This document shows, in pieces, positions 9,040 through 64,000 of a stretch of DNA of 64,000 bases. The stretch covers positions 13,020,001-13,084,000 of the forward strand of contig CM119386.1 in the NCBI GenBank assembly GCA_051294905.1, written 5' to 3'. The DNA is from Botryllus schlosseri (Eukaryota). Numbering within the stretch: the first letter of the stretch is position 1; every line of letters begins with the position of its first letter. A program made the translations under genes and the position numbers. Below the pieces are notes generated by a model. It was not told the DNA's origin, ran no database searches, and saw only the letters and a list, made by a program, of their open reading frames with translations.

Positions 9040-10153
9040 GCGGCTGTAGAGTCAACATAATTGTATTTGGTCTTGATGGCGTCGGAGCCACAAAATTTTT
9101 GTAACACCCTTTGGAATCGGAGTTGGAGTCAGAGTTGGGGAAACTCGGGTAACCATATTTTGTTATCCGAGAAAGAAGACTCTTTTTTCAGGTGATGTCA
9201 ACGGCATGGTCTTTACGGGAAATGGTGTGATCGGTCGTGATTTGTGTAAAAAAGGTTGTTTTTCCGAGCCGGTTCCCACGGCTTGTTTAGTTTGTCACCA
9301 ATTGGGACGTCATAGTGGATTGACATTGATAATTGAAAATATAGGATAAATATAGTTCTTTTGACGAAATATCTCTACTATCGCTGTTAAACCGACTATT
9401 TTGAGGGTTCCAACCATCCCATATCCATATACGTCGGCTATATCGGGGTTAATTGTTCGTAGGCTCATACAACATGTTTTTGGAAAGTATTTACACAATT
9501 ATGGCATAATTTTACAGCTTGAAAAAACATCATTTTTTTTAAAGGCCTCTGTTTAAAACACTGTTTAAAACATGTTGTAAACATAGTGTTTTAAAACACC
9601 GTTTGTTTTAAATGGAACCCTAACTGTCTCTATATCATCGGCGGCAATAAAAGAGGACGTTTTACTACAAAAGGGGAAATTTGGGCGTCCTCGGAGGACA
9701 TTTCGGTTCTATTGAAAAAAAATGACAAATCCTCTTGAAGAGGAGGTATGGTATCCACAGGGGAAACACAAACTGGTCGGAGTCGGAGTTGGAGTGGTAA
9801 AATGTTCTGATTTCGACTCCGGCTACTTTGAAATTCATCCTAATGTTCTCAAATGCTACTAAAAAGTGCCGTTGCAGTTACAAAACACATTACGTTCTTC
9901 ACGTTGGCGGAATTCCACAAACTCAATTTCTTTCTGCGACCTTGATTTCCCTCAATTCAAAGAAAATAGGCTGATCAAATTGGTAATATTAATGACTAAA
10001 ATGTAAATTAACATGAACGTTGGAGTCGGAGTTCTGTGAAGAAAATATTGGAGGTCGGAGTAGGCAAGTTTAAATCTTCCAGAGTCGATACACTGAAAAT
10101 GTCTGGAGTCAGAGTTGGATTAGGTGGTAAAGTTAACCGACTCCACAGCTCTG
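9040..10153. mobile_element. Degenerate hAT-type MITE with GGAGTCGGAG subterminal arrays, containing a family X copy (~9300-9622)
   Basis: Right end CCGACTCCACAGCTCTG; repeated GGAGTC(G/A)GAGT; nested segment matches 63060-63335. Confidence 0.6.
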
Positions 10154-13474: not shown

Positions 13475-13979
13475 TAGGGCTGCATTTTAAACAAATGGTG
13501 TTTTAAAATATACGTCGTTTATAACATGTTTGAAACAGTGTTTATAAATATACCTTTTTTCAAACGTTGTATAATTATGCGATAATTGTGTAAATGCTGT
13601 CGAAAAAACATGAACTACGAGCCTGCGGACGATTTGCACTCGACATAGTCCACGAATACGACATGGAATGGTTGGAACCCTCGAAATCTTCGGCGGTTCA
13701 ACAGTTATAGCACGTAGATACAAATCATTGGTACGGAATTGCTGTTCTGATGATGATGATGACGACCATAAAAATGCTGCATAACTATGTAGTCCTAGTT
13801 AACGATATTTTTGGTCCGTTATGGCAGGGTCGGAAGCCTTTTTCGTCAAAGGAGTCATCAGTCAATCCACGGTGACGTCACAATTAAATATTTGTTGCGT
13901 CGTGGCTAAAAAAACAATGAAAATACATGTTTTAAACGAGGGTCATGTTTTAACCATGTTTGTTTTAAATGCAAACCAA
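13475..13979. mobile_element. Older, reverse-oriented copy of MITE family X
   Basis: TAGGGCTGCATTT left end; internal TGGTTGGAACCCTCGAAA is the reverse complement of the 63140-63170 core; TSD decayed. Confidence 0.65.
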
Positions 13980-29300: not shown

Positions 29301-32300
29301 GGCTCAAATGAATTTTTTCAGACGAAATCAAACCATTCAAATTATTTATATAACACAATAGTATTCAAATGTTAATGTCTGCATATTTAATGCTCAGTAT
29401 CAAAACTAGCTTACGTTGTAGGAATTGTGACCTGCCTCCAATCATTTGTTCCCAGATCAGTTAATTGCGAACCATATAGTTCTCATTGGTCCGCTCTCAC
29501 TTACAATAAGGAATCGTAGTGTGAGGAAATGCATGCAAAACATTTTTGTCCAGAATTCAAACCCTGCAAAATCGTCCGTTACGATTTCAATTCAATCTTT
29601 TAGTAACAATTTTATCATTTCAATACACAACAAGACTGCGATACAATGAAAAGATAGTAAGGTGCCGAAAGGACTTGGAGTAGTCTGAAATCAGACACCC
29701 ACCTGGCCTAGGTGATGTAAAAAGGAGGGAGGCATGCACAGTGAATGAAAATTAAAATAAGGTAATGTAAAAAAACAGGCGACAAAAAGAGGTGCAAGTG
29801 TTGGAAGGCGAGACCGATGTGTCAGGTCCTGGTCCGGTAAACTTGAGGGCTGATTGATTTCACCTGTACCTCTCTGCACCATATTATCATCTTCCTACTG
29901 TACTGTATTGCTTTGAAGTATATAAAGTTATACACAAATACTTTTCCAACAGTTTGTCTCGTGTGTTCTATGTGCTAGTAAAGGCATACCGATCGTAATA
30001 GTCCATAACATAAAATGTCATAAATAGAGCCAGTAGATCACAATATGAGCAGAGTAATTATGAACTTACCTTTGAAAAGTTTTTATTGAAGTTTATTAAA
30101 AAATTGAGGTGTGAGGGTAAGACGAGACAAAATTGCGGGGTGAGTTGAGACACCGGTATCTGATCGATTTTCTATTGAAAGAAATTAAATTTTCCAATAC
30201 AGTTTTAACTGTTTACAGCACAAATGATAGTTATCTAGTAGTTAGCTCGATGCGGCAGCACAAGACAAAACAAGAACACAGGGTCCCATGTATAATTTGC
30301 TTTCGATGGCATTTAAAATCATATGATGTACAAATCCGTTTCAAAAGTGGATTATTTCATGATTACTAAATTTAATTTACGATGCTACTAGCTGATTCAG
30401 CATTTGGGATGAATTGGTGCTGTATCGAATAGGAATTGCCTGGTGTTTCATCCTGAACACAGTGTGTCTCATGTTACCCTCACCTGGGGGTACTTTAAGA
30501 CATTGGACCAAGGATTTTTGAAGCCCAAAAAATCCTGTAGTACGTTGTTCAATATATCTCAAAACGGATCACAGGCTTTGCATCAGAACCAAAATTTATG
30601 CTCTGAAGGCATTACTTTTTGAGTGGCGCTGAAAGACATAAAAAGTGTCCCATCCCACCCTCTTCTACGCAGAGCAAATTACAATATATTATCAAGTGGT
30701 ACTTTTTTCTATTTAATGCAGATAGTAGAATTTTACACAAACACTTTTTCAGTCAAACGTCAATACCAAAACCGGTCCGCATCTCTACTAATTTCCATTG
30801 AAACACAATCCGTGTCCAGGTTATAATTTAATTCAATATCCTCTTCTGCAGGATACCCCCAAACTTGGAGCTGGAGGCCCTTTTCAAACGGCATTTCACC
30901 CAAGTGGAATTCTTCGAAGGTTCTGTGCTTGTGTCGAGCGATTTGTCTCGGGTGAAAATCGAGGAGGCTGACGCCTGCGTCATCTTGGCCAACAAGTATT
31001 GCGAAAACGCGGATACGGAAGACGCCTCCAATATCATGAGGTAGTCTAATTCCGGACTGTAACTTGTTAATTGCGGAAGTGGTTTCTTAATCCAGCCTGG
31101 GAACGCCCTAGAGATTTGAGAAGATTCAAGATTATCGATGTGGCAAGATCTTACCCTGCTTGCTTTTATTTTATGCCCGCTCGAGGATCCTCCCTATCTT
31201 TTCATTGTATAGCAATCTTTAAAACCATTGTATCAATAAAGCTGTCAATAAACAAATGAATGAAAGTGTGTAGTCGGTAAATTCAAAAGCTACCGGTATC
31301 TCAACTTCAATACTGCTACATTGTCGCATATTTATTTAACAAAGTCCCTTAATCAAGTTCATGACAGAGGTTAAAAGGTTTGCTGACACCTTTCTGAACT
31401 ATGGTAACGACATAGTGCATGTATGGACATCAGCAAAGGTGCTCATGAAAGTTACTGCATTGCCATTTCATAAAAATATTGATGATATGATTGTAGGGTT
31501 AATGAGCATAGCTTACATAGTCTGTTACATGAGCTATTTGTGATTCGACAAATCTTGTGATGTATTAATCACGTTATTTTGTTTTATTCCAAAGCTTCCT
31601 TGGAGACTACACTGCATTTCGTTATTTAAAAGCCACTCCTGCGATTCAGTCCTGGAGAACAACACCCCAACTATTACTGAAACAAACGTGCTTCTTTTTC
31701 AGAGTGATATCAATAAAGAACTACCACCCGAAAGTGCGAATCATCATTCAGATTATGCAGTATCACAATAAGGCTCATCTGCTCAACATACCCAGTTGGA
31801 GCATTGAGGTTGGTTTTGAATACGGAAATAGCAGCGTGCGAATTCACCCAGGCGTCAAAACCGCTAAGAGTATCTATATATCCGAATTCCCTACGGTATA
31901 TTTCGATTGAAGTTTCCAAACACGATACTTAATATCATTGATAATTCTTTATGATGACCATCTTATTTTTCCGCTGCAAACCTTCCGATATGAGTTATAG
32001 TCGAGTCCTCAGTGATGTGTATTTCTGTTATTTTGATTTGAATGCTTGGTAATATGGTGTTTGCCTATTCTCATTGTAGTTGATTCATTTAATTCTGTGA
32101 CGTATGCCATTGAGTCCCGTGGGAGACAAATACCGACGGAGATAGTATTAATGATATCATCTCTTTCAAGGCGCCAAATAATCAGGGATATTGGTCTTGA
32201 ATCAATTTCTGGTATTTGGTGGGGATATTGATTTTGCTTCAAATGAATATCAACTGCCATGAAGTTACTTTAAAGATTTATTGACACAACAATCGATACT

Positions 32301-41300: not shown

Positions 41301-44300
41301 GCATTTTCTTGATTTTTCGTTTAACCAATAACCTTGTTTGGTTTCATGCATCAAATAACATTTTGAAGACCATTGGTTGAAAAATGTGTGAAATTGATTA
41401 TGCCATATTGTATGGTTTCATTGGCTACCTATGTAGTTCAAGATCCCCACCACTGCGTTGTTGATAATATCCACGTCAGTGTTTCTTCTGATGTGTTAAA
41501 ACTATGTTAAACAAGGTAGCTCAATGCAACATAGTTTGTATCACTGCTAGTATGATATCAAATGAAATTTAGTTCTACAGCAAGGTTTATACTTTTCATC
41601 AAAGAACAGAATGTATCACGGTATTGCCTTGGGTATACATCAGTGGTTTCCAACGTGGGCGATATCGCCCCCAAGTGGGCGATTTTGAGAAACAAGGGAG
41701 AAAATACCAAAGGGGGCGATGGGGGTGCGAAAATATTATAATGACCAGTGAGATCATGGCCAAAAAATGCACTTGAAGATGGTTTATTTTGCATATGACG
41801 CGAAAACCGGTTTTCCGTGCACCTACTCTGTCAATTCAAAAGCGATCAGAGTTAGCTGAATGAATGTCCCGTTTTTTAATACAATATGCAATACATTGGG
41901 TTATAATTTTCATCTGAACAAGCTACACATACAATGTACAATGCGATAAGACACAATGCAATGTAACGAACAGATAGGAGGATGTCGAACGACACGCATC
42001 AGTAGCGATCCTTTATATGTCCTCATTGCCGGATCCATAAACATGGGGGGCGAAAATTTGTGTCGAGCTTGATAAGGGGGCGATGAGTCCAAAAAGGTTG
42101 GGAACCACTGGTATACATGTACATAATCACAAAAAGTTGATCAAAATCCCCCTATCCTTACCTACGTAACTGATATCGTGACGATGGTTACCACTATTAA
42201 GTTGGCGACCGGGGCTACTGACCAATCATGGTCGAAGTCCTTTTAAATTTACAAACAGGAATGTTGACCAATGAATTGTGTATAAAAATAGTATATCTGG
42301 CAGTCACAAGGTAGGATATTGCTACATATATTTCAAACAATATGGCCTTTGTATTCCATTTTTGATATTTATTTGCATGAAATTCCATTGCTGAAAGATC
42401 GCTTTGTGATTGCCTAATTCTTACTATCACTGATAATAATTAGCTTGCATGGCTCTAATATCTCAAGTTTGGTTAGTGGTATGGTGCTGGTTTAACGCAT
42501 GTTTCGGTAGTGATGTTTTATTCTTTCTTTATTGACCTATTCCGCGCAGGAAGAGCAAAGAATATACAGACTTATAAATTTCCTGATAGCAAGCCAGACT
42601 CTGGTAAGTTATGTTGGGGATGTAGATATGAAAGATTGGCTTGCGCTTGTTCAAAATGGGATGAAATACAATTCTTCCTTAATTGGGCCGCAGTGTTTAT
42701 ATATTTTTTTTTTTGCTGGAAATATCGTAACGAACATGCCACGAAATAATTGAACCGATTTCTGTTCCAATAGTATGTAATGGATAGTGAAATCTCATAC
42801 ACCATGATTTAAAATACTGCATCAATGATTCGATACTAACCAATTCAGGGCTTCTATTTTGCATGCCCAAGTGAAAAATCAAGCCAAATCAACTTACTTG
42901 AAACATGAATTTTGTTAGAACATTGATGTATTCCTAGTTTCCTCTTTGATACTCTGTATAATAAGGTTACACCATGGAGATAGCAGTGTGGTTGTGGACT
43001 TGTGCTGAATATCGATCAGGCTGAATTCTTTTAACATTACTGCCTCCAGAGTTAAGCGTGCATCCAGATAAATGATGAACCTATTTCTACTCAATATATT
43101 GTTATCATAAGAAAAGGCCAGCTTACTCTGCCAGAATTACCAGTAACGTATTGGTTATTTCTGGAAATCATGACATACTGTAGCATATCTCTGAGTACAC
43201 TTGAGCATACTTGATGGTCTTATTACATTTATGCGGTTATGATATTCTTAGAAAATCGTAAAACTGCTAAAAGGCATAATCGTGAATAATTTGTATCAGA
43301 CTGTTGGAACCACAATACATTCAGTCATTGATACCTTACTCTGACAGTGTAAGCTAGGTCAGACGATTTTTGAGGATAATCAACCAGTTATCTCAATATC
43401 CCTGGGTTGGATTCAGCTGGTTCGCACGATTATACAGAATTGTCTCATGAAATTTTATGGGGTCAGCGAACCGGTTAGCATTTCTGGTAACTGTCAATCA
43501 CTTTTTCTAGCAGAACCACATTTAAAATTTGAATTTTAGTGATAGAACCAGCTGACAAAATATTGAATCCTACCACGGGAATCAACGTTACAAGATAACA
43601 CATCTGCCAATGATTGAACATATTTTGAATGCGGCACAATCCGGTGACCCAGATAATGCTGATCATTATTGGTCAAGATGGATTTGATTTATGAGATGAT
43701 TTTAAACAGACATTGTGTAAAAACTATGTAAGTTCCATAAAAGGTATCTAGTAGAATTCCTTATTTTTCCATCACGCGATTACCGTATTCTACTACCGTA
43801 TCCCTCTCAAAAGGGATATTGGTTTGTCTATTGAATTCTGTCCACTGTCAGTAGCCGAAGTAACATTCCGTCGACGAATTTGTTAAGAAATATATAGTTT
43901 TCATTTGATCTGTGATGGGTGTAACTCTTGACATTGATATCCATATTTTCTTTGTGGTTTGAAAGTAATATTGCCATATGTGGAAGAAAAGACCAAATAA
44001 GTGAAATTTGTAACTTTTTCTCGACTACGGCGGAAATTAAGCCTTTCGCAATTTTGATCGAAAGCAACTTTTAAGTTTCTTCTACTGGTAACTGTGGTAC
44101 GATGTATTGCAACAGTGTTTTGTGCTCCATACTTTGAATGTTGTGATGCAGACATGCAAGGCTTCGAAGCTCCATTGTTGAAAGGATAGGCTACATGAAT
44201 GAAACTATAATTTTTGTGAATGAAATAAATTTTAGTAGGCACAGGGATGCAAAGATTTGAACTGGCGCCACTTGGCACCAATCATTTCATTCAATATGTG

Positions 44301-47300: not shown

Positions 47301-50300
47301 CTTTGACAAATAATATTATGCTATGGCGTCATAATGAGTGATACTCGATTACTCGACTCGACTCGAAGCATTTTACGTGATTCAGAATCGAATCACTCAG
47401 GTACTCGATTTTGCCCAGCCCTAGTATTAAGCCAGCAGGTGCTTAGCGACAATAACTTTACCCAGCGCTGTAACACGAAATTAAGTTGAAAGATACCTGT
47501 TTTTCAAACTTCTTTTGATTTATTAATGAGACACTTGGATCGGGAACATGCACTCAGAGATATTAATGAATTATTGATGTCCCGTTATCTTTAGAAGTAC
47601 AAAAACTTATTGTCTGAAATGGCACAGCGTCACATTTTTTCATAGTATCCCATTTCTTTTGCATCATTGAACCAACGGGTAACGTAGTTCTACAAACTGG
47701 GAGCAGTAATATTGCAAGCATAAGAATATCGCTGCGTTTTGTGCCTACGTATCTACTTAGTTGTAATCAGGATTTTACGATCAACCACATGCAAAAATTA
47801 TACCCTCAATCCGCCGTGAACGGATTTCATCCGTATTATCATAATGTTTTCAGATATGCATTTGATCACTGTCTGTGTAACTTACAAAGTCGAAACATGC
47901 ATGTGAATGCTAATACATCCTGCGAATACTGTTGCATGCTACGAATGTGTCTGATTATCCTCCATTGTGATTTCTTTCAATTCGGTGACATTTCGATATG
48001 TTGTGTGTGTTCATTGGTAAAAAATAAACATTTTGCAATGACAGCAGTCGAAATGTTGCCGCCTCCATACGAAGCAACATCCGGTAAGGATTCAATGCAA
48101 TCTGGCAATCCGGAGTCTTCGAGACGCAGGTGATTTGGATTAGAGATTGAAGTATACGAGACTTCACTGTATAAATCAGTGATTCCCAAACTGTGTTCTA
48201 TAACTACTTCAATAGCTCATAACAACATATGACTAACATATTACGGCACTGTCGACAGGGAAAGGTAATTGCTACGTCATATTTAGGCTGCTAGATTAGA
48301 ATCAACTCGTGAACAAGGAATCATTCCGCAAATCATGGCGGCATTGTCCCACTTGTACTCCAGCATTATATCCCAGAATTTGCGGCTCAACAACTTTAGA
48401 CGGGTAGCGAAATCATTTGGAAGCAATGAATCAAACACTCGTTATGCAGAAAACGAATACTGTTTCATTGATTTGCGGATCAAACGATTTTCTCAAACGA
48501 CTTTTCCACAAAAAAATGGACCCGTTTTGACAGTCTGCTTCCAAATGCTATTCTATATAATCGATGCAAAAGCAATAATAATCATATTGGTCATTCCCAT
48601 ACATTTGAACATGTATTTCCTGTTTTGACAAAAATTAAAAGCTGCAAACGAGCGAAATTACCTCGAATTTAACACGAAATATGAGTAGCCTATGCGTCTC
48701 AATATTGCAACTTCGTTTCATCAGTATATGCTCAATGTTCGTTTAAAGAAGCACACTCATTAAAGCGTGAAAATAATTTTTAGACTTTTTTCCGCTTGTA
48801 AGTGCGCCGCGAGTGTCATATCATTTTTCTGGCGCGCCACAAGTTGAAAGATTTTGGGAACCATTGGCCTAAATAGTTGTGTATGCCAGGCATTAAAGCT
48901 GTGACGTATATCATTACATTTCAGTTTGATAGTATTGATTGGCCGAATTTTCGACGTGAGGTTATATTTCAGTGCTCCGGCAACTACAACAGTAATATCC
49001 TCAGTCGCGACCGCACCCAATTCGCAAGACGTGGATTCCGCGATGAAATATGACAGCACGGGAATGTTTCACTGGTGCCCATCTCGAGACCTTAGAAAGT
49101 GTATTTTGGTGAGGATTTCATTCCTTTTTTATTAAATCCATCGGGGTTTAAAATCATCGCAATGTTGCTGCTATCATTGAGATTATTGAAGATGTATACC
49201 GCAATTTTTCGTGACGTTTTATCACAAGAATGATCAAATACCTCGCATATCTTACAGAGCCTCGTACTCGTTTCGTATTTACTAACGCTGGTGAAACATA
49301 TCTTGATGGTGTTCGAAATTGCTGTTGACATCCTTGTTTAAATAGCATTCGAATGTGCACGCCTACTGATATCAATGTAAGGCTTACAGCGGTTTCCAAC
49401 TGGTTGTATTCGGTTTACCCTCACGCTTCACTGCCATGACTGCACTAATTCACAGTGGGTGTGTAATTGGCGCCCCACGGATGCATTTATGATTCGTTTT
49501 CGAGCCTTGGCTAGTCTTGGAGCTGGCAATCATTTATATAGACTAGAAGAGTCTCTGAGGTATCGCGGTGACACTAGCATCTTCATTTTTGGGACGCAAG
49601 AACACAAAAACATACTATGGAAAGAGTGAAAAACATTTGAATATTTCAGCCTCCTGTAACTGTTTTGATTCGATACAATCACCAGAGGCAATAGCATAGT
49701 GAGCTTTAATTTGGAATGTCTCGGTCATGGCTATGCTGGTTGTACTGAGTGGACACGTCTGATTTAACAATAGCTCTCTTAGGCCTGGTGTACAAGACCT
49801 TAGTAGTCAAGCACCATAAACCCCTTATACATTCATACATGCTTTCAACATGATTGATTGGGAACCGGCGTGGACCATGTCATAATGTCCCATTTCAAGG
49901 TATAATGTGAACCGATAAATTTCTCAGATTTTTGTCAAAAGAAAACTGGACATTCTCACTGCCTGCGGCAGATCAATATCCAGACGAAATTACATCCCCG
50001 CATTTTGTATTCAGAGCAGGGAACGGGCGTCGCACATCACTCTACGGCGTCACATTATAGCGTGCATTTTCGGCGATGCGAAAAGTCCTTTGCTCGGGTT
50101 GCGAAATTTTATCATGCCGCTGAGGGCATCCAACTTCCACTATCACGAGCTCAGGCCCATTGTGCTGCTCGGCGATTTGGACTTCATCAAACGAGAATGG
50201 GACACCATTTGCAACTTTCCAAAAGTGGATATTTTGCCTGTAAGTCTGTCTGGTTTCACACTGTTATGACACTGCAGCTTGCGAATTAACGGACTCCTAT

Positions 50301-56300: not shown

Positions 56301-59300
56301 TTTTTTTCTCAAATCGTACTGGCTACTTGATAAAATTGTTATGTTACCTAATTTAAGCCTACACACAAAATTTGGTTCAATTCCAGCCAGTAACCGCTTT
56401 GCTACAGGAGAAGAAAGTTTCTATATATTATATAAAAATAAATAATAAAAATTTTGAAAATTTTCTGTTCACCCCATGAAAGTGTTAGGCTATCTAGTGT
56501 CTATAGAAACGATGCTCACCAAATTTGGTTCAATTCCAACCAGTGGAAGCGGAGTTATTGCCGTCGAAAAATTTGGATTTGAATAAAATAGTATTTACGG
56601 TGACCAATTCTTTGTTTATTTATTATAGTTGTGCTCACCGTAAATACTATTTTATTCAAATCCAAATTTTTCGACGGCAATAACTCCGCTTCCATATGTT
56701 GGAATTGAACCAAATTTGGTGAGCATCGTTTCTATAGACAGCCTAACACTTTCATGGTGTGAACAGAAAATTTCAAATTTTTTATTATTTATTTTTATAA
56801 AATAAATAGAAACTTACTTCTCCTGTAGCAAAGCGGTTACTGGCTGGAATTGAACCAAACTTTGTGTGTAGGCTTAAATTAGGTAACCTAACAATTTTAT
56901 CAAGTAGCCAGTACGATTTGAGAAAAAAAGTCATTTTTGAAGAGCCCTAACATACATACATAAACTGACTATAACTATTCACAGAAACAAACAAGAACTG
57001 TAGTCTATCATATTTTTGTGGCATATTCAGAGGTCGATCAGCGCCGCAAGAAGGCTACCTTGGAGCCGCGGTTGGGAATCACTGGCCTAGGCCTAGGCCC
57101 AGGCGGGTGTCTGATTTCAAAGACTACTCCAGGTCGTTTCGGCACCTTCCTATCTTTTCCTTGTATCGCAGCCTCGTGGTGTTTTGAAACGATAAAATGA
57201 TTAACAATAAACAGATACCAATACCCGTTACAAGTTTCCGTTGCTTTGACAGACTGCGGGACGTGAATCACGACGCGGATCAAGTGACGACGAAACGCTA
57301 CGTCATCACGAGTCCGCCGGACGATTTCAAGCTGATGAAGTCGGACCTTATATTCTGTCTTATGCAGTTCGATTTTTGCGGGAAGAATAACCTCGCCACA
57401 AAGTAATGCGGGGTTTTGGCTTGTCTGCGTTTACGTTACTATGTATAAGTGCGCGGCGTGGCGTATATGTGCGATAGACAGGGCTGGGCATAATCGAGTG
57501 CCTGATTGGTTCGATAACGGGTCGAGTATTGACCTTCGGGTAGAGTACCACTCATTATGACCAAATTGGGCGGCTATATTAGGGTTACCATATTTTGGGA
57601 ATCTGAAAAGAGGATGCTTTTTCAAAATTTACAGACTTGCAATACCGGAGTAAAATCCCGAAAAAACGGTAAATTTTTCCCGACTTTTAGGTCGGTTGAC
57701 TAAAAAAAAAGGTCATTTCTCTGGCTCAAGTTCCGAAACCCCGTCGGACCGGTACTTGGCCGCTGATTTCCTATATCTCTGCCAATTTCCACGTACATTT
57801 AACCAAAATTCTCAAAAGAAGAGGACAAATTCTCAAAAGAAGAGGACAAATTCTCAAAAAAGAGGACAGATCCTCTTAAAAGAGGACGTATGGTAACCCT
57901 AGGCTATATGCCTGGAAAAATTTGTTTGTTCGTTTCAAACCAACTCATCAACAAGAAATCGTTCAGCAAATCAGGAACACACTGTCATAAATCAAGTAAA
58001 CGTTTTCCAGAAGAGCTGCTCATTGACATGAAACGCCCGGATTTTTGAAACTCTGTTTTCGCTAAAAGCTTTGGATGTCTCCTCCCAAATTTTATTCCAT
58101 GATTGTTGATATACAATGTTCTTTCCAATTCTCTACTAGTTGCTGACGATTACCCCTGACGAGGGTCAGCCGAAAATATTCAGGTTCATTTCAATATGAA
58201 TATACTATTCAATTGTATATTGAAGTTCTGTACCTCCAAGAAGCTCTCCATGATAAGTGCGATCAAAATTTTATTGTCATTTGCACATTCACGGGTGTGT
58301 GAACGTGTTTTTTCTTCGTTTTGACTGACACATCAATCGATTTTCTAAGCAACGTTCTTGTGAGGGTGCCACAAGCCGAAAAAGTCTGGGGACCACTGCA
58401 CTATATAGTCTTCTGTAAAAAACATAAATTGGATTAGACAATCGAATTTCAATTCTTGACCACAATCATCACAATTGACGGTCGACCAGGGATTCACGTA
58501 CTCAAACCGTTGTGCTCAGCCCTACACAGCTACACTGTACCCACCACCATAGTATCGACCTGTTCACATCCGCTTTGGTCTCCTGGATTACATAATAGAG
58601 TGTATACCAAGGTAGCAAATGAGTTTAACATCTTTCCCAATGTACGAAAGCATTACATGAACGCTACCGTATAGTTCAAATGGAGTGGAAAATAACGGGT
58701 TTCGAATACCCGAGTAGATGAAACCCGGCTGTAATCGAGCTGGAGAAAACTTACAGATTGCCTATTGATCTTTCTTACGCTCTTTTGTAAAAAATATCGG
58801 CACGACCGCGACTATACGGAGACGCTTTTCTTTAATCCAGCCCTCAGAAAGTTCAGCCCTCGTCTTCAACCCTGGCAGCCTCTACCCTGGCGGAGATTTG
58901 TTAGGATGAATCGCCGTAAGTGTGAGGTCATCGGTGAAGCATGGCTGCGCGTTTCTAATTCTGTTCACTATGTAGCGGTTTGCGTATGGATCGGCTTGCC
59001 TTCTGCCTTTTTCGTTTGGTAACGGGGTGATTCGATGCAGAATCGGCGAATATAATTTGCGCTGTTTTGTGAATTTGTGTTGCCGAAGATTTTAATTGGT
59101 ATGGTGTCCAATCTAATTTTGTTCCTATCTGATAATGCACCGACAGTAATCATTGTATACAATTGAATACTACATTCGTATTGAAATAAACCTGAATATT
59201 ATCAGCTAACACTCGTCAAGGGTAATCGTTAGGTGATACGATTGTTGATATGCAATGTTCTTTCCAAATCTCGACCAGTTGCTGACGATTCACCTAGACG

Positions 59301-61273
59301 AGTGTCAGCCGAAAATATTCGGGTTTATTTGGATACGAATATATTATTCAATTGTATACTTAAGCTCCGTGCCTTCAAGAAACTTTTTAGTGATCTTTTC
59401 CGTATTATTGACAGTTTCTCCTGCTAAAGCGTTGTGTGGACGTATGCTTGGCTCAGTAACTGGGTTAAAAAGTTCAATATCTATTGCAATAGAATTGCTG
59501 TATAAGGAATCTTCGCCTCGTTTCAATTTTCAACTTGAGCATTGTTCGCTACGTCAAAATTGCGCCTCGAAATCGTGTCGTTTAGAAATGAACTACATCC
59601 TGTCAATTTTCAACGGCTTCTCCCAAATTTTTTCCATTTGGATACAGAAGTTCTATCAGATCACTGTAGGCCCAACATTTCCAATCTTTCCCTGTAGCGT
59701 GCTGCAAATAAGATAATAGATGAGTTAGATGACGAAAGCTACTAAGTACTAACATATAAAGGTTCTTTATTTACAGTTTTATGGTGACAAGTTTACACAA
59801 TCCCGTAATCCCCTCTCGAATGCATAATGTCAATGCACATATAAATCAATCAGTATTCTTTAGCAAAGCTCACCATCTCTAGGAATCGATATATGGTCAC
59901 AAGACTCCTGATTTGTTGTGATTTTATTTATATTTTGCTGGTGTTGTAGTTGCTTTTGATGTGCCGTGATTTTTAGGGACCATATTTAACCTACCTGTGG
60001 TTGATTTATCAGAAAAGTAACCTCAAATGCCTTATCCTAACGTACAGCACGCCGTGAATGGTACGATATGCCATCTCTCAATACTACAACAGGTATATAT
60101 CCGGTTAAGAAGCACAAAATAATATCACTTTTGGTATTTGCGAATCAAAATTTACAATTGTAAAGCGTAAAAATAGTATATAAGTAAACAGAACAAAGCT
60201 AACACAATCCCAGGACATGCATTGCGGAAACTTACTGCATTGACCGTGGCTGATATAATTCATGATTCCTTCGCGCAATTCCTACAGTAAAAGCTACTTA
60301 TTATAGACTGGGACAATTAGCCAATCCTAATCGTTTAGTTAGACTAATTAACTTTATTCAAAGATACTTTTGAAATGTTTCTATGATTCAAATTTTTGGT
60401 TTTCCTGAAAATGCTACAGGAAACGAGCTAAGCTATACTGTACGGAAATCTGCCACTTTTCATGCATTTCAGAATAAACTGACATGAACCAAACTTGAAT
60501 TTTGTTGCCTTTATTTCTAATCCGGAATTTAATTCATATTCAAAGTTATCGTGAATTCAGAAATGAGGAAAATTGTCTATTTGTCCAAGTCTTTTACAGA
60601 TATTAAAATACTAATATTAGCAAATTATGGACGGACCTGAAATTTACATTCTTACCGTGTGCAGTGCGTTGCATGCGATACCCTCTAATTGTGTTGAACT
60701 AATTTCGATATCGTGTGACCAATCGAAGATTTTAATTTAAAAGCGTCCCACGAATTCCGTGCGTGAACACCGATTCCTTTCAGGTCCGGGATGGCATTGA
60801 AACCGTCGCACGCGGCCACTTCATCCAGCTTGACAGTACCATACGCGTCGCGCGCTTTAAACAGGAGCAATTCGGATCGGCGCGATTCCAACTACACATC
60901 ATCACAACCCGTTAATTCATCGCCGCAGTTCGGCTACGCGACCCATTCGCAGTACCTATCAACGCCGTCTTTACCGCGAACGCCCGGCAGGCAAGAAGGC
61001 GAATCTCTTCAAGAGACGCCCACCAGGAATCTGTACGGGTTTCAAAACAACGGCAAAGGCCTAGGACACAACAACAACCACTCGTACGCTGACAAAAGCA
61101 ACAAAACCCCGGCGTCCTCACAGCAAGAACAGCGCGGGAAGAGAACTCCGTCCCGTGAAATACCGGACGACAGGAGGTACGTGAATATCGGAAGCGGCAG
61201 TCTGGAGAAGAGAAAAACTCGGTCGGCGGATCACAGGATGAAAGGGAACAAGTATGACAGCACAGTCACGTAG
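20253..61273 (+). CDS. KCNMA1: Slo1 / BK large-conductance Ca2+- and voltage-activated K+ channel alpha subunit, full gene model (27 coding exons, 1237 aa with exon 17a, no cassette)
   Basis: join(20253..20318,20881..21032,21651..21816,21883..21944,22596..22689,24588..24699,25361..25512,25570..25650,26030..26211,29010..29120,30852..31040,31703..31808,32499..32618,34323..34432,34492..34560,37406..37492,40012..40088,48045..48129,48973..49108,50015..50239,51028..51220,51475..51573,54196..54326,54426..54620,55206..55279,57253..57402,60784..61273). Sum 3714 nt, all phases compatible, GT-AG except one GC-AG. Hallmarks: S4 [10 protein letters not shown], filter TVGYGD, RCK1 [10 protein letters not shown], Ca bowl [16 protein letters not shown]. 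Confidence 0.96.
20881..21032 (+). CDS. KCNMA1: Slo1 exon 2, S0: [50 protein letters not shown](G)
   Basis: Matches vertebrate [24 protein letters not shown]; TAG acceptor 20878-80, donor GG|GTAAGC. Confidence 0.93.
21651..21816 (+). CDS. KCNMA1: Slo1 exon 3, S0-S1 loop: ...[25 protein letters not shown]
   Basis: [13 protein letters not shown] motif; NAGNAG acceptor TAG/CAG (21650 or 21653); donor TTA|GTAAGG. Confidence 0.95.
21883..21944 (+). CDS. KCNMA1: Slo1 exon 4, S1: [20 protein letters not shown](N)
   Basis: 62 nt, near-identical to vertebrate S1; CAG acceptor, GTGAGT donor. Confidence 0.96.
22596..22689 (+). CDS. KCNMA1: Slo1 exon 5, S2: [31 protein letters not shown]
   Basis: 94 nt; FFLLYFGLR motif; CAG / GTAATA. 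Confidence 0.96.
23653..23873. mobile_element. Short MITE related to 15072-15531
   Basis: TIR TAGTGTTGGG / CCCAACACTG; TSD only partly matching. Confidence 0.55.
24588..24699 (+). CDS. KCNMA1: Slo1 exon 6, S3: [37 protein letters not shown](G)
   Basis: 112 nt; TTTTCAG acceptor, G|GTGGGG donor. Confidence 0.97.
24917..25190. repeat. Inverted pair of hammerhead/pLTR-family arms with a 34-bp tandem duplication between them
   Basis: Minus arm 24968-25026, plus arm 25085-25190; GTCATCACCTAGTAGAGAATTGGAAATTGCTGAC at 25023-25056 and 25057-25090; cores mutated (CTGACGG; deletion). Confidence 0.8.
25361..25512 (+). CDS. KCNMA1: Slo1 exon 7, S4-S5: [50 protein letters not shown]
   Basis: 152 nt; voltage-sensor arginines; TTTTCAG / GTGAGG. 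Confidence 0.97.
25570..25650 (+). CDS. KCNMA1: Slo1 exon 8, turret/pore helix: [27 protein letters not shown]
   Basis: 81 nt after a 57-nt intron; YWECVY motif; GTAAGT donor. Confidence 0.96.
26030..26211 (+). CDS. KCNMA1: Slo1 exon 9, filter + S6: [60 protein letters not shown](K)
   Basis: 182 nt; TVGYGD; AA|GTAAGA donor. Confidence 0.98.
27189..27577. mobile_element. hAT MITE (389 bp)
   Basis: TIR CAGTGGTTCTCAACC / GGTTGAGAAATACTG; TSD GTTTAGAT/GTTTAGAG. Confidence 0.85.
29010..29120 (+). CDS. KCNMA1: Slo1 exon 10, RCK1 start: [36 protein letters not shown](G)
   Basis: 111 nt; TTTTCAG / GTGAGT. Confidence 0.97.
29652..29860 (+). repeat. Unclassified dispersed repeat family Z (other copies ~63694-63895 +; 55322-55364 plus 57085-57160 minus; fragment ~26391)
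   Basis: Shared GGTG(C/T)CGAAA...TTGGAGTAG...ATCAGACACCC...GCCTAGG...GGCATGCACAG...GGTCCGGTAA. Confidence 0.7.
30852..31040 (+). CDS. KCNMA1: Slo1 exon 11: [62 protein letters not shown](R)
   Basis: 189 nt; RCK1 motifs conserved. Confidence 0.97.
31703..31808 (+). CDS. KCNMA1: Slo1 exon 12: [35 protein letters not shown]
   Basis: 106 nt; TTTTTCAG acceptor, GAG|GTTGGT donor. Confidence 0.95.
32499..32618 (+). CDS. KCNMA1: Slo1 exon 13: [40 protein letters not shown]
   Basis: 120 nt; AAG|GTAAAC donor. Confidence 0.97.
32730..32945 (-). mobile_element. Probable tRNA-derived SINE, second family
   Basis: Minus strand reads TTGCTCGGTGTTTAGAGC (A-box-like) ... GGGTTCAAATCG (B-box-like); single copy seen. 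Confidence 0.45.
34323..34432 (+). CDS. KCNMA1: Slo1 exon 14: [36 protein letters not shown](E)
   Basis: 110 nt; EMYTEY motif. Confidence 0.96.
34492..34560 (+). CDS. KCNMA1: Slo1 exon 15: [22 protein letters not shown](K)
   Basis: 69 nt after a 59-nt intron; GTGAGT donor. Confidence 0.95.
37406..37492 (+). CDS. KCNMA1: Slo1 exon 16: [28 protein letters not shown](R); non-canonical GC donor
   Basis: 87 nt; INPG...EGTLGFF motif; donor AAG|GCAAGT. Confidence 0.94.
38076..38865. mobile_element. hAT MITE (790 bp)
   Basis: Perfect 15-bp TIR CAGGGGCGGCCAACC; TSD GTTTAACT/GTTTGACT. Confidence 0.9.
40012..40088 (+). CDS. KCNMA1: Slo1 exon 17a (mutually exclusive A): (R)[25 protein letters not shown]
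   Basis: 77 nt, phase 2 to 1; TAG acceptor, C|GTAAGC donor; CXXCH motif. Confidence 0.88.
41147..41238 (+). CDS. KCNMA1: Slo1 exon 17b (mutually exclusive B): (R)[30 protein letters not shown]
   Basis: 92 nt, phase 2 to 1; TTTTGCGTAG acceptor, A|GTAAGA donor; closer to vertebrate [26 protein letters not shown] than 17a. Confidence 0.9.
41641..42110. mobile_element. hAT MITE (470 bp)
   Basis: TIR CAGTGGTTTCCAAC / GTTGGGAACCACTG; subterminal GGGGCGA; perfect TSD GTATACAT. Confidence 0.92.
42550..42603 (+). CDS. KCNMA1: Candidate Slo1 cassette exon at the STREX-equivalent site: (R)[17 protein letters not shown]
   Basis: 54 nt (18 codons), phase 1-1, stop-free; long polypyrimidine tract + CAG, donor CTG|GTAAGT. 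Confidence 0.72.
45292..46278. mobile_element. hAT MITE (987 bp)
   Basis: TIR TAGGGATGGTGTGAAC; subterminal GGTTC/GAACC arrays; perfect TSD GTGTTCAG. Confidence 0.92.
46896..47423. mobile_element. hAT MITE (528 bp)
   Basis: TIR TAGGGCTGGGCA; subterminal ACTCGA/TCGAGT arrays; perfect TSD GTATTAAG; a related left end occurs at ~57478. Confidence 0.92.
48045..48129 (+). CDS. KCNMA1: Slo1 exon 18, RCK1-RCK2 linker: [27 protein letters not shown](S)
   Basis: 85 nt, phase 1 to 2, which is the bridge needed between exons 17 and 19; no sequence homology; acceptor is pyrimidine-poor. Confidence 0.65.
48973..49108 (+). CDS. KCNMA1: Slo1 exon 19: [45 protein letters not shown]
   Basis: [11 protein letters not shown] motif; TTTCAG / GTGAGG. 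Confidence 0.95.
50015..50239 (+). CDS. KCNMA1: Slo1 exon 20, RCK2: [75 protein letters not shown]
   Basis: 225 nt; [13 protein letters not shown] motif; GTAAGT donor. Confidence 0.97.
50447..50690 (+). mobile_element. tRNA-derived SINE, family S
   Basis: B box at 50503-13; same body; GACCATAGTC tandem near the tail. Confidence 0.78.
51028..51220 (+). CDS. KCNMA1: Slo1 exon 21: [64 protein letters not shown](G)
   Basis: 193 nt; [16 protein letters not shown] motif. Confidence 0.97.
51475..51573 (+). CDS. KCNMA1: Slo1 exon 22: (G)[32 protein letters not shown]
   Basis: [10 protein letters not shown] motif, donor G|GTGAGT; 5' boundary ambiguous between two in-frame AAG acceptors (start 51475 or 51484). 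Confidence 0.85.
51899..52212 (+). mobile_element. Solo left arm of the foldback family, nested in hAT 51826-53399
   Basis: Colinear with 56281-56600 (TAGGGGTCTTCAAAAATGAC...GAATAAAATAGTATTT). Confidence 0.85.
52768..53021. repeat. 254-bp inverted repeat nested in hAT 51826-53399
   Basis: Arms 52768-52874 and 52905-53021, few mismatches, one CAGCATTGTT duplication in the right arm. Confidence 0.88.
53408..53500 (+). repeat. 3' part of a hammerhead/pLTR-family copy interrupted by the hAT insertion 51826-53399
   Basis: GTCAGCCGAAACTATTCGGGTTTATTTCAATATG...GAAGTTCTGTGCCTCC; its upstream flank (...CAATTGTCTACTA) lies at ~51790-51825. Confidence 0.75.
53948..54117 (+). mobile_element. 5'-truncated family S SINE (further fragments at ~7960-8110 and ~4585-4630)
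   Basis: Body and tail match the two full copies. Confidence 0.72.
54196..54326 (+). CDS. KCNMA1: Slo1 exon 23, calcium bowl: (V)[43 protein letters not shown]
   Basis: 131 nt; intact Ca bowl. Confidence 0.99.
54426..54620 (+). CDS. KCNMA1: Slo1 exon 24: [65 protein letters not shown]
   Basis: 195 nt; TGGATPELE motif. Confidence 0.98.
55206..55279 (+). CDS. KCNMA1: Slo1 exon 25: [24 protein letters not shown](R)
   Basis: 74 nt; YGDLF...LCFGIYR; TTTCAG / GTAAAG. Confidence 0.96.
55365..57084. mobile_element. Non-autonomous hAT element (1720 bp) containing the foldback
   Basis: Ends CAGTGGCCCCCGACC / GGTTGGGAATCACTG, subterminal GGAGCCGC at both ends, perfect TSD GCCTAGGC (55357-64, 57085-92). 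Confidence 0.85.
56281..56949. mobile_element. 669-bp foldback hAT-type MITE (near-perfect palindrome)
   Basis: Arms 56281-56603 and 56635-56949, 31-bp spacer; termini TAGGGCTCTTC/GAAGAGCCCTA; 8-bp TSD ATATACAT/ACATACAT. Confidence 0.93.
57253..57402 (+). CDS. KCNMA1: Slo1 exon 26: [49 protein letters not shown](K); read-through ends at TAA 57404-57406
   Basis: KRYVIT-PP...[10 protein letters not shown] motif; donor AA|GTAATG overlaps an in-frame stop. Confidence 0.93.
57580..57901. mobile_element. hAT MITE (322 bp)
   Basis: TIR TAGGGTTACCATA; AAGAGGAC subterminal repeats; perfect TSD GGCTATAT. Confidence 0.92.
58100..58248 (+). ncRNA. Minimal type-I hammerhead ribozyme motif in a Penelope-like pLTR-type repeat (best-preserved copy; core 58142-58185)
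   Basis: ACCC-CTGACGA-G(GGTCAGC)C-GAA-AATATT-C-AGGT: intact CUGANGA and GAAA, 1-bp helix II, palindromic helix III, UUC cleavage triplet at 58179-81; one C.A mismatch at helix I. Confidence 0.7.
59150..59385. repeat. Second inverted pair of hammerhead/pLTR-family arms
   Basis: Minus arm ~59150-59231, plus arm 59281-59385; cores degenerate (TTGACGAG/GATA; CTAGACGAG). Confidence 0.8.
60784..61273 (+). CDS. KCNMA1: Slo1 exon 27, long S/T/N-rich C-terminal tail ([15 protein letters not shown]...DDRRYVN...KYDSTVT*)
   Basis: TTCCTTTCAG acceptor in the phase 2 required by exon 26; 162 further open codons with coding-like GC content; low-complexity tail as in other Slo1 proteins. Confidence 0.8.
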
Positions 61274-61359
61274 ACAGCACCCGTATATCAACTCATGATT
61301 GAATGCGCAGCACGCACTAACGAGCAAATTGATAGCATTTCACACCGTGTGTAGAAATC

Positions 61360-61587
61360 AAGAGATGAGCGAATCTAGTATATCCAATCCGGAACTAATA
61401 CTGTCTGATGTCTAAACCTAAATCCCTAGTCCAAATCCGGTAACGGCTGACATTTGTTCAAAAGTCTCGTGAAAATAATAAAAATTTCTTATCCAAAATC
61501 ATCGTGAAACCATATCCGATCCAAATCCGGCCAAAATCATCAAACGCGGTTTTGCTAAGTCGAAGTCCAAATCCATGCTCATCTCTG
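61360..61587. mobile_element. Degenerate hAT-type MITE 87 bp after the exon 27 stop
   Basis: Ends AGAGATGAGC / GCTCATCTCTG; ATCCAAATCC subterminal repeats; contains AATAAA at 61477. Confidence 0.6.
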
Positions 61588-62880
61588 GGAAAATAGGTCG
61601 GTACTGAAACCACCTGTCGCGACTTTGCGTGGTCAGTGCCTCCTTCGGACACCAAAGTACGTAGTGTTATATTTTTTCATCTGCACCATGTTGCGTTATT
61701 CTGTGCGAGTTGGTTTGTTTACTCTTCGTGTGTTGGCGGATTTCTCTGATCTTTTACTGCGTCTCTTATCTCTACCTATCACTGTTTTATCGCTCGATGT
61801 CGAAGATTTGATCTTGCTTGCTTTACCGCGTATTATCACTGACGGGCGGAAAAGAGTCGCGCGTCGTGATATTCGACCGATGGAGGGCGTATTCAACGCC
61901 AAAGTAAGGACTCTGCCTATGGGTCGAACCCTTGATTCGATCAAACACAACCTGCGGACAGATACGCGCCTAACTTTCAATAGTACATGAAATGCAATAT
62001 ATTTAAACCTCTGCTTTACTGCGGAATCCAAGTATCGCCTGCCGCTGCAGTCGAACAGGTTTTGGTTATGACGCGAAAGGCTTTGTTTTAGCTGTACAGC
62101 AGTCATGTTTAACTTTCGACCGTATGCTGCTTACTGCTCATCAGTGTTTGATAGCACTTGTGAAATCTCTGTTTTTTCATGCCATTCACGGAACAAGATC
62201 AATCCATCGAATTCTCGCGGTATCAATGACCTTAACTGTCCTCTGCGTATCTATAGAATCTACACCCGAAGAGGGCTATGCTTCGATGTGCGGTCCATAG
62301 TGTTTCACGGAGAATCCTGACATGTAATTCTTTATCATCTATGTTCCTCTGGCGAATGTATAGAGCTTATGAACCCGGATAAGCTCCATAGAAAATCGGG
62401 CTGGCGATAGCAATAGGGTTTGCTTGCGCTTACTGGCAACGGAAGCTATTATGGACCGGGCGTAAAGAATGAGATGGGCGTAAAAAATTTCAGCAATGAG
62501 GCGCAGTCGCAAATAATAGTAAATATGGCACAAGCAGCGCGTCATTGCAAAATGATGAAACAACAATGTCCGAGTTGATAGATTCGGGGGCAATGGAACC
62601 ATCCCGCTCATTCTACGCCGCAGGGTGCCGTCAGGCAAACTTCGCTTTTCTCCATCTTCGCAAACATTTTCGCACCTTTCATTTCGCACGGAATCAATAC
62701 TTGTTCTTCTTCCGGCACTATATATAGTACCAACTCATCCGCGGTTTCTTTGGTTTCCTCTGTTCTATCGTTGTTAGATTTGATATATCGTCGATGAATC
62801 GCGAATCATTATGATTTGAATTTTTATTTAATCAATAAAATATGAAACGTTCTCTCCTATTTGGTTTCTTTGTGTCTTAG

Positions 62881-62912
62881 GAGTCGCACCGAAATGCGGG
62901 AGTACGTACCAG
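62881..62912 (+). CDS. Orphan 32-nt micro-exon, candidate alternative Slo1 C-terminal exon: (R)SRTEMREYVP
   Basis: Long polypyrimidine tract + TTAG acceptor and CAG|GTAAGT donor; open in phase 2 from the internal donor at 61176; could instead belong to a downstream gene. Confidence 0.5.
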
Positions 62913-62933
62913 GTAAGTCGAATTGTTTACCAT

Positions 62934-63335
62934 CAGGGTTGCATTTAAAACAAAAATCAATTTAAGACAAACATGTTTAAAACAAGGCCCTAAATTAAAA
63001 CATGTTTTTTTTTGTTTTTTTTTTAATCCGTGACGTCACGAATATTCAATTATGACGTCATAGTGGGTTTACATTGACCATTGAAAATATAGGGTAAATA
63101 TAGTTCCTTTCACGAAATAGCTGGACTATTAATGTTGAAGCGACTATTTGAGGGTTCCAACCATCCCATATCGATATACGTCGGCTATATCGGATGGTAA
63201 TTGTCCGTAGGCTCATACAACGTGTTTTTTGGAAAGTATTTGCACATTTATGGCATAATTTTTCAACTTTGAAAAACACAGTTCTTTTTTTAAAGGCCTC
63301 TGTTTAAAACACCGTCTGTTTCAACTGCAACCCTA
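62934..63335. mobile_element. hAT MITE family X (402 bp)
   Basis: Ends CAGGGTTGCA / TGCAACCCTA; perfect TSD TTTACCAT; related copies at ~9300-9622 and 13475-13979. Confidence 0.88.
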
Positions 63336-64000
63336 TTTACCATACTGTTGAATGTTGATGCTATCTGCGAAGCTGTAAAGTGCAGTAAGAGCACATTCTT
63401 TCCGTATTCACGCACGTTGCACTGGATATGGAATAGGCTGGAAACTTGTCGCAGAATAGCGACACATAATCTGCATCGGAAGTGACACGGAAAAACGATT
63501 GAATACAAAACACTCCCCATAATAGTTTCTGATGCGATATTTCACGCAAGCATTCGTCACCAGTGAATGCAGCACGACACAGCGTGGGGATATTGATGAT
63601 GGATTCGGTTATCACATCAATAGTAGATTCAATCAATCAGTTTTATTAATATTTTCATCATTGCAAAACATCACAAGGCAGCGATACAACGAAAAGATGG
63701 GAAGGTGTCGAAACAACTTGGAGTAGCCTTTAAGATCAGACACCCACCTTAGCCTAGGCGAAGTAAAGAAGAGGCATGCACAGTTGCACACTGAATGAAA
63801 AGTGATGCAGAGAATATAAGACGCAAGCGACAAAACGAGGTGGCACGTGGCGAGGTCGATGTTAAGTCGTGGTCCGGTAATCCTAGAAGCTGGCTAGTAT
63901 TGACTATCAATACAAAATTCGAATACCCCTGTTAAAGGCCGGCTGAAATATCAGACTATAGTTCAGAATTTATTAGTAGGCCTATAGGCTACCAGTGCCG

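What the first reader, a model, noticed from the sequence alone, without database searches (positions are those of the whole stretch)
61141..62918. C-terminal splice switch resembling the vertebrate ERL/VYR/DEC system
Seen: inside exon 27 the codons R-Y-V are written AG|GTACGTG (donor after 61176, phase 2). 1.7 kb downstream is a 32-nt exon with very strong splice sites (62881-62912) that is open in that phase, giving ...DDRR-SRTEMREYVP, then phase 1 to an exon I could not find in the window. Known (from memory): in vertebrate KCNMA1, read-through of a phase-2 donor gives K-Y-V-QEERL, while splicing gives the RKEMVYR or DEC tails. Inference: the same donor-in-YV logic, and possibly an R-x-E-M motif, is ancestral to chordates or convergent.
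Basis: partly seen in the sequence, partly recalled or inferred. Interest (0 to 1): 0.75.

Follow-up and report, generated by a model that had tools for sequence, protein, structure and literature searches.

The report
Possible alternative tail of BK channel
A sea-squirt BK potassium-channel gene has, in its last coding exon and 1.7 kb downstream, the sequence signals for swapping the channel's tail as vertebrates do, but no RNA or cross-species data could be obtained, and the small downstream exon could equally be the start of the next gene.

Summary
The window holds a sea-squirt BK/Slo1 gene. Its last coding exon (60784-61273) contains AG|GTACGTG after 61176, in phase 2. A 32-nt unit (62881-62912) has a pyrimidine tract plus TAG acceptor and the only perfect CAG|GTAAGT donor on either strand of the 64 kb.

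- **The small unit is probably a real exon.** About 0.015 such acceptor-donor pairs are expected by chance in the window.
- **"Open in that phase" says nothing.** It is open in all three frames.
- **The read-through tail is coding.** Two relatives (84% and 45% identical) keep it, down to ...GNKYDST..T*.
- **The 61176 site is a credible donor.** It is the best donor-like GT between the exon 27 acceptor and the small exon, and stronger than 10 sampled constitutive donors. The distant relative has only AG|GTTTTC there.
They show ...RDKQ then K+YVQEERL, or RKEMVYR, or the 60-residue VEDEC tail.
- **Use of the splice could not be tested.** Every search for RNA-derived fragments or for related DNA covering the small exon came back blank.
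- **There is a serious rival.** The small exon has an in-frame ATG 13 nt after its acceptor and a TATA-like motif 160 nt upstream. That fits a spliced-leader first exon of a downstream gene.

My odds: BK tail switch about 0.4, next gene's first exon about 0.35.

The parts
57251..57402 (+). BK exon 26 (end of the Slowpoke_C domain, ...[26 protein letters not shown]...). Donor AAA|GTAATG after 57402, phase 2. The 5' boundary is approximate.
   Evidence: Pfam PF21014 E 6.6e-10; PDB BK chains E 2e-10; sequence.
60784..61273 (+). Last coding exon ('exon 27'). Acceptor CCTTTCAG|G, then 162 codons and TAG at 61271-61273.
   Evidence: Sequence. Homologous ORFs P0001 (84%) and P0002 (45%), with the same acceptor position in L001.
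61174..61182 (+). Internal donor-like site GAG|GTACGT, phase 2, written across codons R-Y-V.
   Evidence: 7/9 consensus and 8.9 bits. It is the best GT between 60784 and 62912 and exceeds the 10 validly scored constitutive donors of the 11 sampled.
61177..61273 (+). Read-through tail (R)[31 protein letters not shown].
   Evidence: Conserved in P0001. The end motif GNKYDST..T* is also kept in P0002.
61477..61482 (+). First AATAAA after the stop (204 nt downstream). Likely poly(A) signal of the read-through mRNA.
   Evidence: By my reading of the L001 sequence, the relative also has an AATAAA about 200 nt after its stop.
62719..62726 (+). TATA-like motif TATATATA(G), 160 nt upstream of the small exon. 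It is the only one in 61-64 kb.
   Evidence: 34 such motifs on the + strand of the whole window.
62834..62839 (+). Second AATAAA, ending 41 nt before the acceptor AG.
62858..62880 (+). Acceptor of the small exon: a 75% pyrimidine tract plus TAG.
   Evidence: Only 44 sites this good on the + strand.
62881..62912 (+). 32-nt candidate exon. In the BK phase it reads (R)SRTEMREYVP then phase 1. It is open in all three frames.
62894..62896 (+). In-frame ATG in a GAAATGC context (A at -3 to -1), open to the donor. The three ATGs in the 100 nt before the acceptor all hit stops.
62910..62918 (+). Perfect donor CAG|GTAAGT.
   Evidence: Unique in the window on both strands; 0.31 expected.
62935..63334 (.). 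MITE-like repeat with 18-nt terminal inverted repeats, 22 nt after the donor. Not part of the exon.

Best explanation
The gene is a sea-squirt BK/Slo1 channel gene, and its default mRNA reads straight through exon 27. That gives a conserved tail ending ...GNKYDSTVT and probably uses the AATAAA 204 nt after the stop.

My best guess, by a narrow margin, concerns transcripts that run past that poly(A) site. In some of them GAG|GTACGT after 61176 would act as a donor and join the acceptor at 62881. This would remove the last 32 codons and replace the tail with SRTEMREYVP plus at least one further exon beyond the window.

That would be a choice between a retained intron and a spliced alternative 3' end, built like splice site 4 of vertebrate KCNMA1 (QEERL by read-through; VYR or VEDEC by splicing).

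Shown: the BK identity, the exon 27 boundaries, the coding status of the read-through tail, and the strength and rarity of the signals. Inferred: that either site is used, that the two are joined, and that the arrangement shares ancestry with the vertebrate one.
For: - **BK identity:**
- **The small exon's signals are far beyond chance.** It has the only 9/9 donor in 128 kb of both strands (0.31 expected), 32 nt after one of only 44 acceptors this good on the + strand.
- **The 61176 site is the natural partner.** It is the strongest donor-like GT in the 2.1 kb upstream of that acceptor (8.9 bits). The 10 validly scored constitutive BK donors reach 2.2-8.2 bits.
- **Both possible upstream donors are phase 2** (57402 and 61176), so either splice stays in frame.
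- **Published vertebrate constructs fit the layout.** A primer encodes ...R-D-K-Q-K with K = AAG, followed by the last 7 residues of ...QEERL. RKEMVYR is 21 bp and the VEDEC tail 180 bp. A junction after AA of a split K/N codon fits these.
- **The tunicate codons look homologous:** D-D-R-R-Y-V against vertebrate D-K-Q-K-Y-V.
- **The exon start resembles the VYR exon.** S-R-T-E-M matches R-K-E-M at 3 of 4 positions within one residue of register. Simulated chance is 0.003 for that register and 0.01 at any offset.
Against: - **No RNA evidence of any kind.** Three protein-database searches covering fragment sizes 33-283 aa found only genomic ORFs.
- **The 45%-identical relative has R-F-S written AG|GTTTTC,** a poor donor, at the same codons.
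- **The read-through tail is conserved to its last residues,** so it is at least the main form.
- **The small exon has no stop,** unlike the terminal VYR exon, and no continuation exon is visible in the remaining 1.1 kb.
- **It carries first-exon marks:** an in-frame ATG in an A-rich context and a TATA-like motif 160 nt upstream.
- **The donor-like spelling partly follows from codon choice.** An R-Y-V peptide with an AGG or CGG arginine codon spells one automatically.
- **The motif match was noticed after the fact.**
Confidence: 0.4

Rival explanations
1. The 32-nt unit is the first coding exon of a separate downstream gene on the + strand. Transcription would start near 62750, after the TATA-like motif. 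The spliced leader would be trans-spliced onto the unpaired acceptor at 62881, translation would start at ATG 62894 (M-R-E-Y-V-P...), and the perfect donor would join exon 2 beyond the window. BK would then have only the read-through tail, and the R-Y-V donor look-alike would be unused.
For: - **In-frame ATG 13 nt after the acceptor,** with A at -3 to -1 and open to the donor. The three upstream ATGs (62794, 62811, 62842) all run into stops and would be removed with the outron.
- **The only TATA-like motif in 61-64 kb lies 160 nt upstream**.
- **No good donor between that motif and the acceptor**, so the acceptor would be unpaired in such a transcript.
- **Trans-splicing is common in ascidians.** About half of Ciona genes are SL trans-spliced at unpaired acceptors (PMC1488885). 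Earlier notes on this genome describe acceptors in front of ATGs.
- **BK has its own AATAAA 204 nt after the stop.** By my reading of the L001 sequence, the relative has one at a similar distance.
- **The distant relative lacks a good internal donor**.
Against: - **No downstream gene is visible.** 62913-64000 holds only repeats, with no Pfam hit and no credible exon.
- **An ATG open to the donor in a 32-nt unit is not rare by chance** (my rough estimate, about one in three).
- **One TATA-like motif per 1.9 kb is also common.**
- **This reading leaves two things as coincidences:** the R-x-E-M similarity, and the strongest local donor sitting on the codons that match the vertebrate split codon.
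Confidence: 0.35
2. Both are true. The exon belongs to a downstream gene, perhaps in an operon-like unit with BK, since an AATAAA ends 41 nt before the acceptor. BK transcripts that read through occasionally cis-splice 61176 to 62881 and give in-frame BK-neighbour chimeras of little or no function.
For: The ATG frame equals the BK phase. An AATAAA lies just upstream of the acceptor. Ciona operons juxtapose the upstream 3' end and the downstream trans-splice acceptor, and an acceptor with an upstream partner donor prefers cis-splicing (PMC1488885).
Against: 16 of 18 Ciona operons lack AATAAA near the boundary. A 1.6-kb BK 3' UTR is not supported by the relative, where by my reading of L001 an AATAAA lies about 200 nt after the stop. 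No RNA data.
Confidence: 0.12
3. Chance. Neither the internal GT nor the 32-nt unit is ever spliced, and the signals are accidental.
For: The internal donor alone is expected about 0.3 times per exon of this size. Constitutive donors here are weak, so consensus strength predicts use poorly. No conservation data exist.
Against: A perfect 9-mer donor 32 nt after a strong acceptor is expected about 0.015 times in the whole window on both strands. The unit is not part of any in-window repeat.
Confidence: 0.1

Closest known systems
Vertebrate KCNMA1 (BK/Slo1) alternative splice site 4: QEERL, RKEMVYR (VYR) and VEDEC C-termini
   Same: It is the same gene family and the same place, the end of the last common exon. 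A split basic codon is followed by Y-V when read through to a nearby stop, and a downstream exon begins R-x-E-M. Published sequences agree on the vertebrate side...RDKQK (K = AAG) plus 7 residues ending QEERL, RKEMVYR as 21 bp, and VEDEC as 180 bp (PMC3642354, PMC3840924, PMC6901604).
   Different: The tunicate read-through tail has 32 codons after the split one, not 7, and ends in its own conserved motif GNKYDSTVT. The downstream exon is a 32-nt internal exon without a stop, whereas the VYR exon is terminal. Use of the splice is unproven. A relative lacks the Y-V donor. That the vertebrate donor is GTATGT is recalled from memory and was not checked here.
Spliced-leader trans-spliced first exons and operons of ascidians (Ciona; PMC1488885, PMC2760879)
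   Same: An acceptor with no obvious promoter-side partner donor, a short leader (13 nt) before an ATG in an A-rich context, upstream ATGs that would be removed with the outron, and a strong first donor.
   Different: No downstream coding sequence, SL-bearing cDNA or conserved N-terminus could be shown. In a BK read-through transcript the acceptor does have a strong potential partner donor at 61176.

Membership tests
KCNMA1 site-4 type C-terminal splice switch | The host gene is a Slo1/BK alpha-subunit orthologue and the site lies after the Slowpoke_C domain. | tested here: met
   PF21014 match on exon 26; human, Drosophila and Aplysia BK structures are hit; pore, S4 and Ca-bowl exons lie upstream.
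KCNMA1 site-4 type C-terminal splice switch | A donor inside the last common coding exon whose read-through reaches a stop and gives a functional tail. | tested here: inconclusive
   GAG|GTACGT in phase 2 is present and is the strongest local donor. The read-through tail is conserved in two relatives. Use as a donor is untested, and the site is poor (GTTTTC) in L001.
KCNMA1 site-4 type C-terminal splice switch | mRNAs that join that donor to a downstream alternative exon. | not testable with these tools
   No transcript-derived fragments for exons 26-27 in the protein collection. No same-species contigs.
KCNMA1 site-4 type C-terminal splice switch | The alternative exon supplies a complete alternative C-terminus (stop codon, poly(A) site). 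| tested here: not met
   The 32-nt exon has no stop in any frame and ends in a perfect donor. No continuation is found before 64000. The end of the putative tail is unknown.
KCNMA1 site-4 type C-terminal splice switch | The alternative exon is conserved in related species. | not testable with these tools
   The only related contig reaching far enough downstream (Logan SRR25569784, 3243 nt) is listed without DNA. L001 ends 366 nt after the stop. Metagenome scans were blank.
SL trans-spliced first exon of a tunicate gene | An unpaired acceptor closely followed by the start codon of a protein-coding gene. | tested here: inconclusive
   An acceptor, then an ATG 13 nt later in a good context, with upstream ATGs closed by stops. 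The rest of the gene lies outside the window.
SL trans-spliced first exon of a tunicate gene | cDNA carrying the spliced leader joined at the acceptor. | not testable with these tools
   No RNA data are reachable.

The most novel reading that the evidence does not exclude
The phase-2 donor written as basic-Y-V, and a downstream exon beginning R-x-E-M, are inherited from the common ancestor of tunicates and vertebrates. BK splice site 4, the switch that sets surface trafficking of vertebrate BK channels, would then predate vertebrates. Its read-through Y-V residues would be conserved because they are the donor.
Probability: 0.22. Interest if true: 0.55.

Novelty: new member of a known kind. Interest (0 to 1): 0.4.

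Why it matters
Vertebrate BK channels choose among three C-termini that control export from the endoplasmic reticulum, surface expression and dependence on the beta4 subunit (PMC3642354). I found no description of this site outside vertebrates in the papers searched.

If the sea-squirt gene uses the same donor, the switch dates to the tunicate-vertebrate ancestor. It would also offer a simple chordate in which to test what tail swapping does. It would be a clear case of amino acids (Y-V) being kept because they spell a splice site.

If instead the small exon starts the next gene, the finding is ordinary. It would then mainly warn that spliced-leader acceptors in tunicates can mimic alternative exons.

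Tried and rejected
1. **Transcript evidence through the protein collection.** I searched the whole tail exon (sizes 89-283 aa), the 60 residues before the donor (33-105 aa) and exon 26 (40-126 aa). Only two genomic ORFs from relatives were found. Full-length isoforms could not be reached because of the length filter.
2. **Exhaustive phmmer of the tail** returned the same two relatives only.
4. **Exact look-ups of three window ORFs,** meant to fetch same-species contigs reaching beyond 64000, found nothing on record.
5. **Metagenome scans** with the tail alignment and with a degenerate small-exon pattern were blank.
6. **Searches for something else in the region.** Rfam on the window found no family. 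Pfam on ORFs between the stop and 64000 found nothing credible.
7. **Small exon as part of a repeat: rejected.** The MITE starts 22 nt after the donor.
8. **Small exon as a terminal exon,** reading on to TAA 62963-62965 with ATTAAA at 62994: considered unlikely. That stop, signal and T-run lie inside the MITE insertion.
9. **Longer exon versions from acceptors at 62624, 62728 or 62778** hit stops in every frame.
10. **Non-coding conservation with L001:** none, so no 3' UTR footprint.
11. **PDB search to display the vertebrate tail next to the tunicate one:** no significant match.
12. **ESM Atlas call:** it gave no usable protein ids.

Full report
**What is there**

The window carries most of a BK/Slo1 (KCNMA1-like) potassium-channel gene on the + strand. 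Recognisable S0-S1, S2, S3, S4, pore, RCK1, RCK2 and calcium-bowl exons lie between about 21.7 and 54.6 kb.

Exon 26, ending at 57402, matches the end of the Pfam Slowpoke_C domain (E 6.6e-10). It also matches solved human, fly and Aplysia BK structures. Earlier notes of this scan place the genome in a stolidobranch sea squirt related to Styela clava. I did not verify the species independently.

**Check of the observation**

- Exon 26 ends AAA|GTAATG after 57402, in phase 2.
- The last coding exon starts after CCTTTCAG at 60784 and runs 162 codons to TAG at 61271-61273.
- Inside it, codons AGG TAC GTG (R-Y-V) spell AG|GTACGTG. This is a donor-like site after 61176 in phase 2, as reported.
- At 62881-62912 a 32-nt unit follows ...TTTCTTTGTGTCTTAG and is followed by GTAAGT.
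- Joined to 61176 it reads ...IPDDRR-SRTEMREYVP and leaves phase 1. Joined to 57402 it is also in frame.
- The unit is open in all three frames, so being open is uninformative.

**Is it more than chance?**

For the small exon, yes.

- CAGGTAAGT occurs once in the window counting both strands, against 0.31 expected from shuffles.
- Only 44 acceptors on the + strand are as good as this one, so one lies 10-100 nt upstream of a given point about 5% of the time.
- The expected number of such pairs in the whole window is therefore about 0.015.
- The unit is not part of a repeat. A 400-bp MITE-like element with 18-nt inverted ends starts 22 nt after the donor.

For the internal donor alone, no. 41 GT sites on the + strand reach 7/9, so about 0.3 are expected in an exon of this size.

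That donor is still the best donor-like GT anywhere between the exon 27 acceptor and the small exon. It scores 8.9 bits on a generic donor matrix that I wrote from memory. The 10 validly scored constitutive donors of this gene (of 11 sampled) score 2.2-8.2 bits, or 5-6 of 9 consensus positions.

**The read-through tail is real coding sequence**

Two ORFs from Logan assemblies of other species match the exon:

- P0001 is 84% identical and keeps [17 protein letters not shown]...[10 protein letters not shown].
- P0002 is 45% identical and keeps ...RGNKYDSTTIT at the very end.

In P0002's contig (L001) the exon has the same acceptor position. By my reading of that sequence, an AATAAA lies about 200 nt after its stop. 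The window has one at 61477, 204 nt after its stop. So the unspliced form is at least a major, selected form.

At the donor position L001 reads A-R-F-S, written AG|GTTTTC. The AGG codon is kept, but the donor context is poor.

**Vertebrate side**

Papers confirm three mutually exclusive C-termini at site 4, with effects on trafficking.

- A published primer encodes ...R-D-K-Q-K with K = AAG. It was used to replace the last seven residues of the ...QEERL form.
- RKEMVYR is 21 bp and the VEDEC tail 180 bp.

That the vertebrate read-through is spelled GTATGTG is from memory and was not checked.

On this basis the tunicate D-D-R-R-Y-V lines up with vertebrate D-K-Q-K-Y-V. The S-R-T-E-M start of the small exon matches R-K-E-M at 3 of 4 positions within one residue of register. 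Simulated chance is 0.003, or 0.01 at any offset.

**What could not be done**

No RNA-level or comparative evidence for the small exon was obtainable.

- Three protein-collection searches covering fragment sizes 33-283 aa found no spliced fragment.
- The one related contig long enough to include the homologous downstream region is listed without DNA.
- Same-species look-ups and metagenome scans were blank.
- Non-coding DNA is not alignable between the window and L001. A conserved small exon would therefore stand out if the DNA were available.

**The rival reading**

Tunicates trans-splice a leader onto unpaired acceptors in about half of their genes (PMC1488885). Several features here fit that.

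- The small exon contains an ATG (62894) 13 nt after its acceptor. It has A at -3 to -1, sits in the same frame as the BK phase and is open to the donor.
- The three ATGs in the 100 nt before the acceptor all meet stops.
- The only TATA-like motif in 61-64 kb lies 160 nt upstream.
- No good donor lies between that motif and the acceptor.

This fits a first coding exon of a separate downstream gene (M-R-E-Y-V-P...). An AATAAA ending 41 nt before the acceptor could even suggest an operon-like junction, although most Ciona operons lack that signal.

Against this reading, no downstream gene is visible in the last 1.1 kb, which is repeats. Each of these marks is also individually common.

**Weighing**

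I take the small exon to be real (about 0.9). Two points favour the BK switch:

- the strongest local donor sits on the codons that match the vertebrate split codon;
- the exon start resembles the VYR exon.

Four points favour the neighbour-gene reading:

- the ATG and TATA context;
- the lack of a stop in the small exon;
- the poor donor in the distant relative;
- the fully conserved read-through tail.

My odds are: BK tail switch 0.4, separate gene 0.35, both (chimeric read-through splicing) 0.12, chance 0.1. Shared ancestry with the vertebrate switch gets about 0.2 overall.

**Verdict**

The decisive data are junction reads and the sequence beyond 64000. Interest is moderate. If true, it would be a new, tunicate member of a known vertebrate splice switch.

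Noticed in passing
window 62935-63334; copies at 9299-9564 (+) and 13475-13970 (-): A 400-bp MITE-like element with 18-nt terminal inverted repeats (AGGGTTGCATTTAAAACA / TGTTTCAACTGCAACCCT). It carries two perfect TGACGTCA (CRE-like) palindromes and sits 22 nt after the small exon's donor.
   Followed up: partly
window 49046-49060 and 61250-61264: The pentapeptide KYDST occurs twice in the BK protein. One copy is in the linker exon ([12 protein letters not shown]) and one at the extreme C-terminus (GNKYDSTVT*), with 11 identical nucleotides. The C-terminal copy is kept in both relatives, so the tail may mimic the linker motif.
   Followed up: partly
window, the validly scored constitutive BK donors (21816, 22689, 25512, 26211, 31040, 31808, 32618, 54326, 54620, 57402): Constitutive donors of this gene are weak (5-6 of 9 consensus positions, one with T at +3), while acceptors are uniformly strong (pyrimidine tract plus CAG). 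Donor strength is therefore a poor guide to use in this genome.
   Followed up: partly
window 61172-61213: The tail segment [14 protein letters not shown] resembles the C-terminus of ribosomal protein eS30 (RRYVNVASGPGKKR in PDB 9bh5). The E-value is about 1, so it is probably chance.
   Followed up: no
window 63628-63880; copies at 29586-29840 and 57091-57207: Another dispersed repeat family, 74-83% identical between copies. One copy lies just upstream of exon 26.
   Followed up: no
window 42550-42603 and 23914/23967-24203: These are the only other + strand acceptor-donor pairs with an 8/9 donor. The second lies upstream of the S3 exon and was not examined.
   Followed up: no
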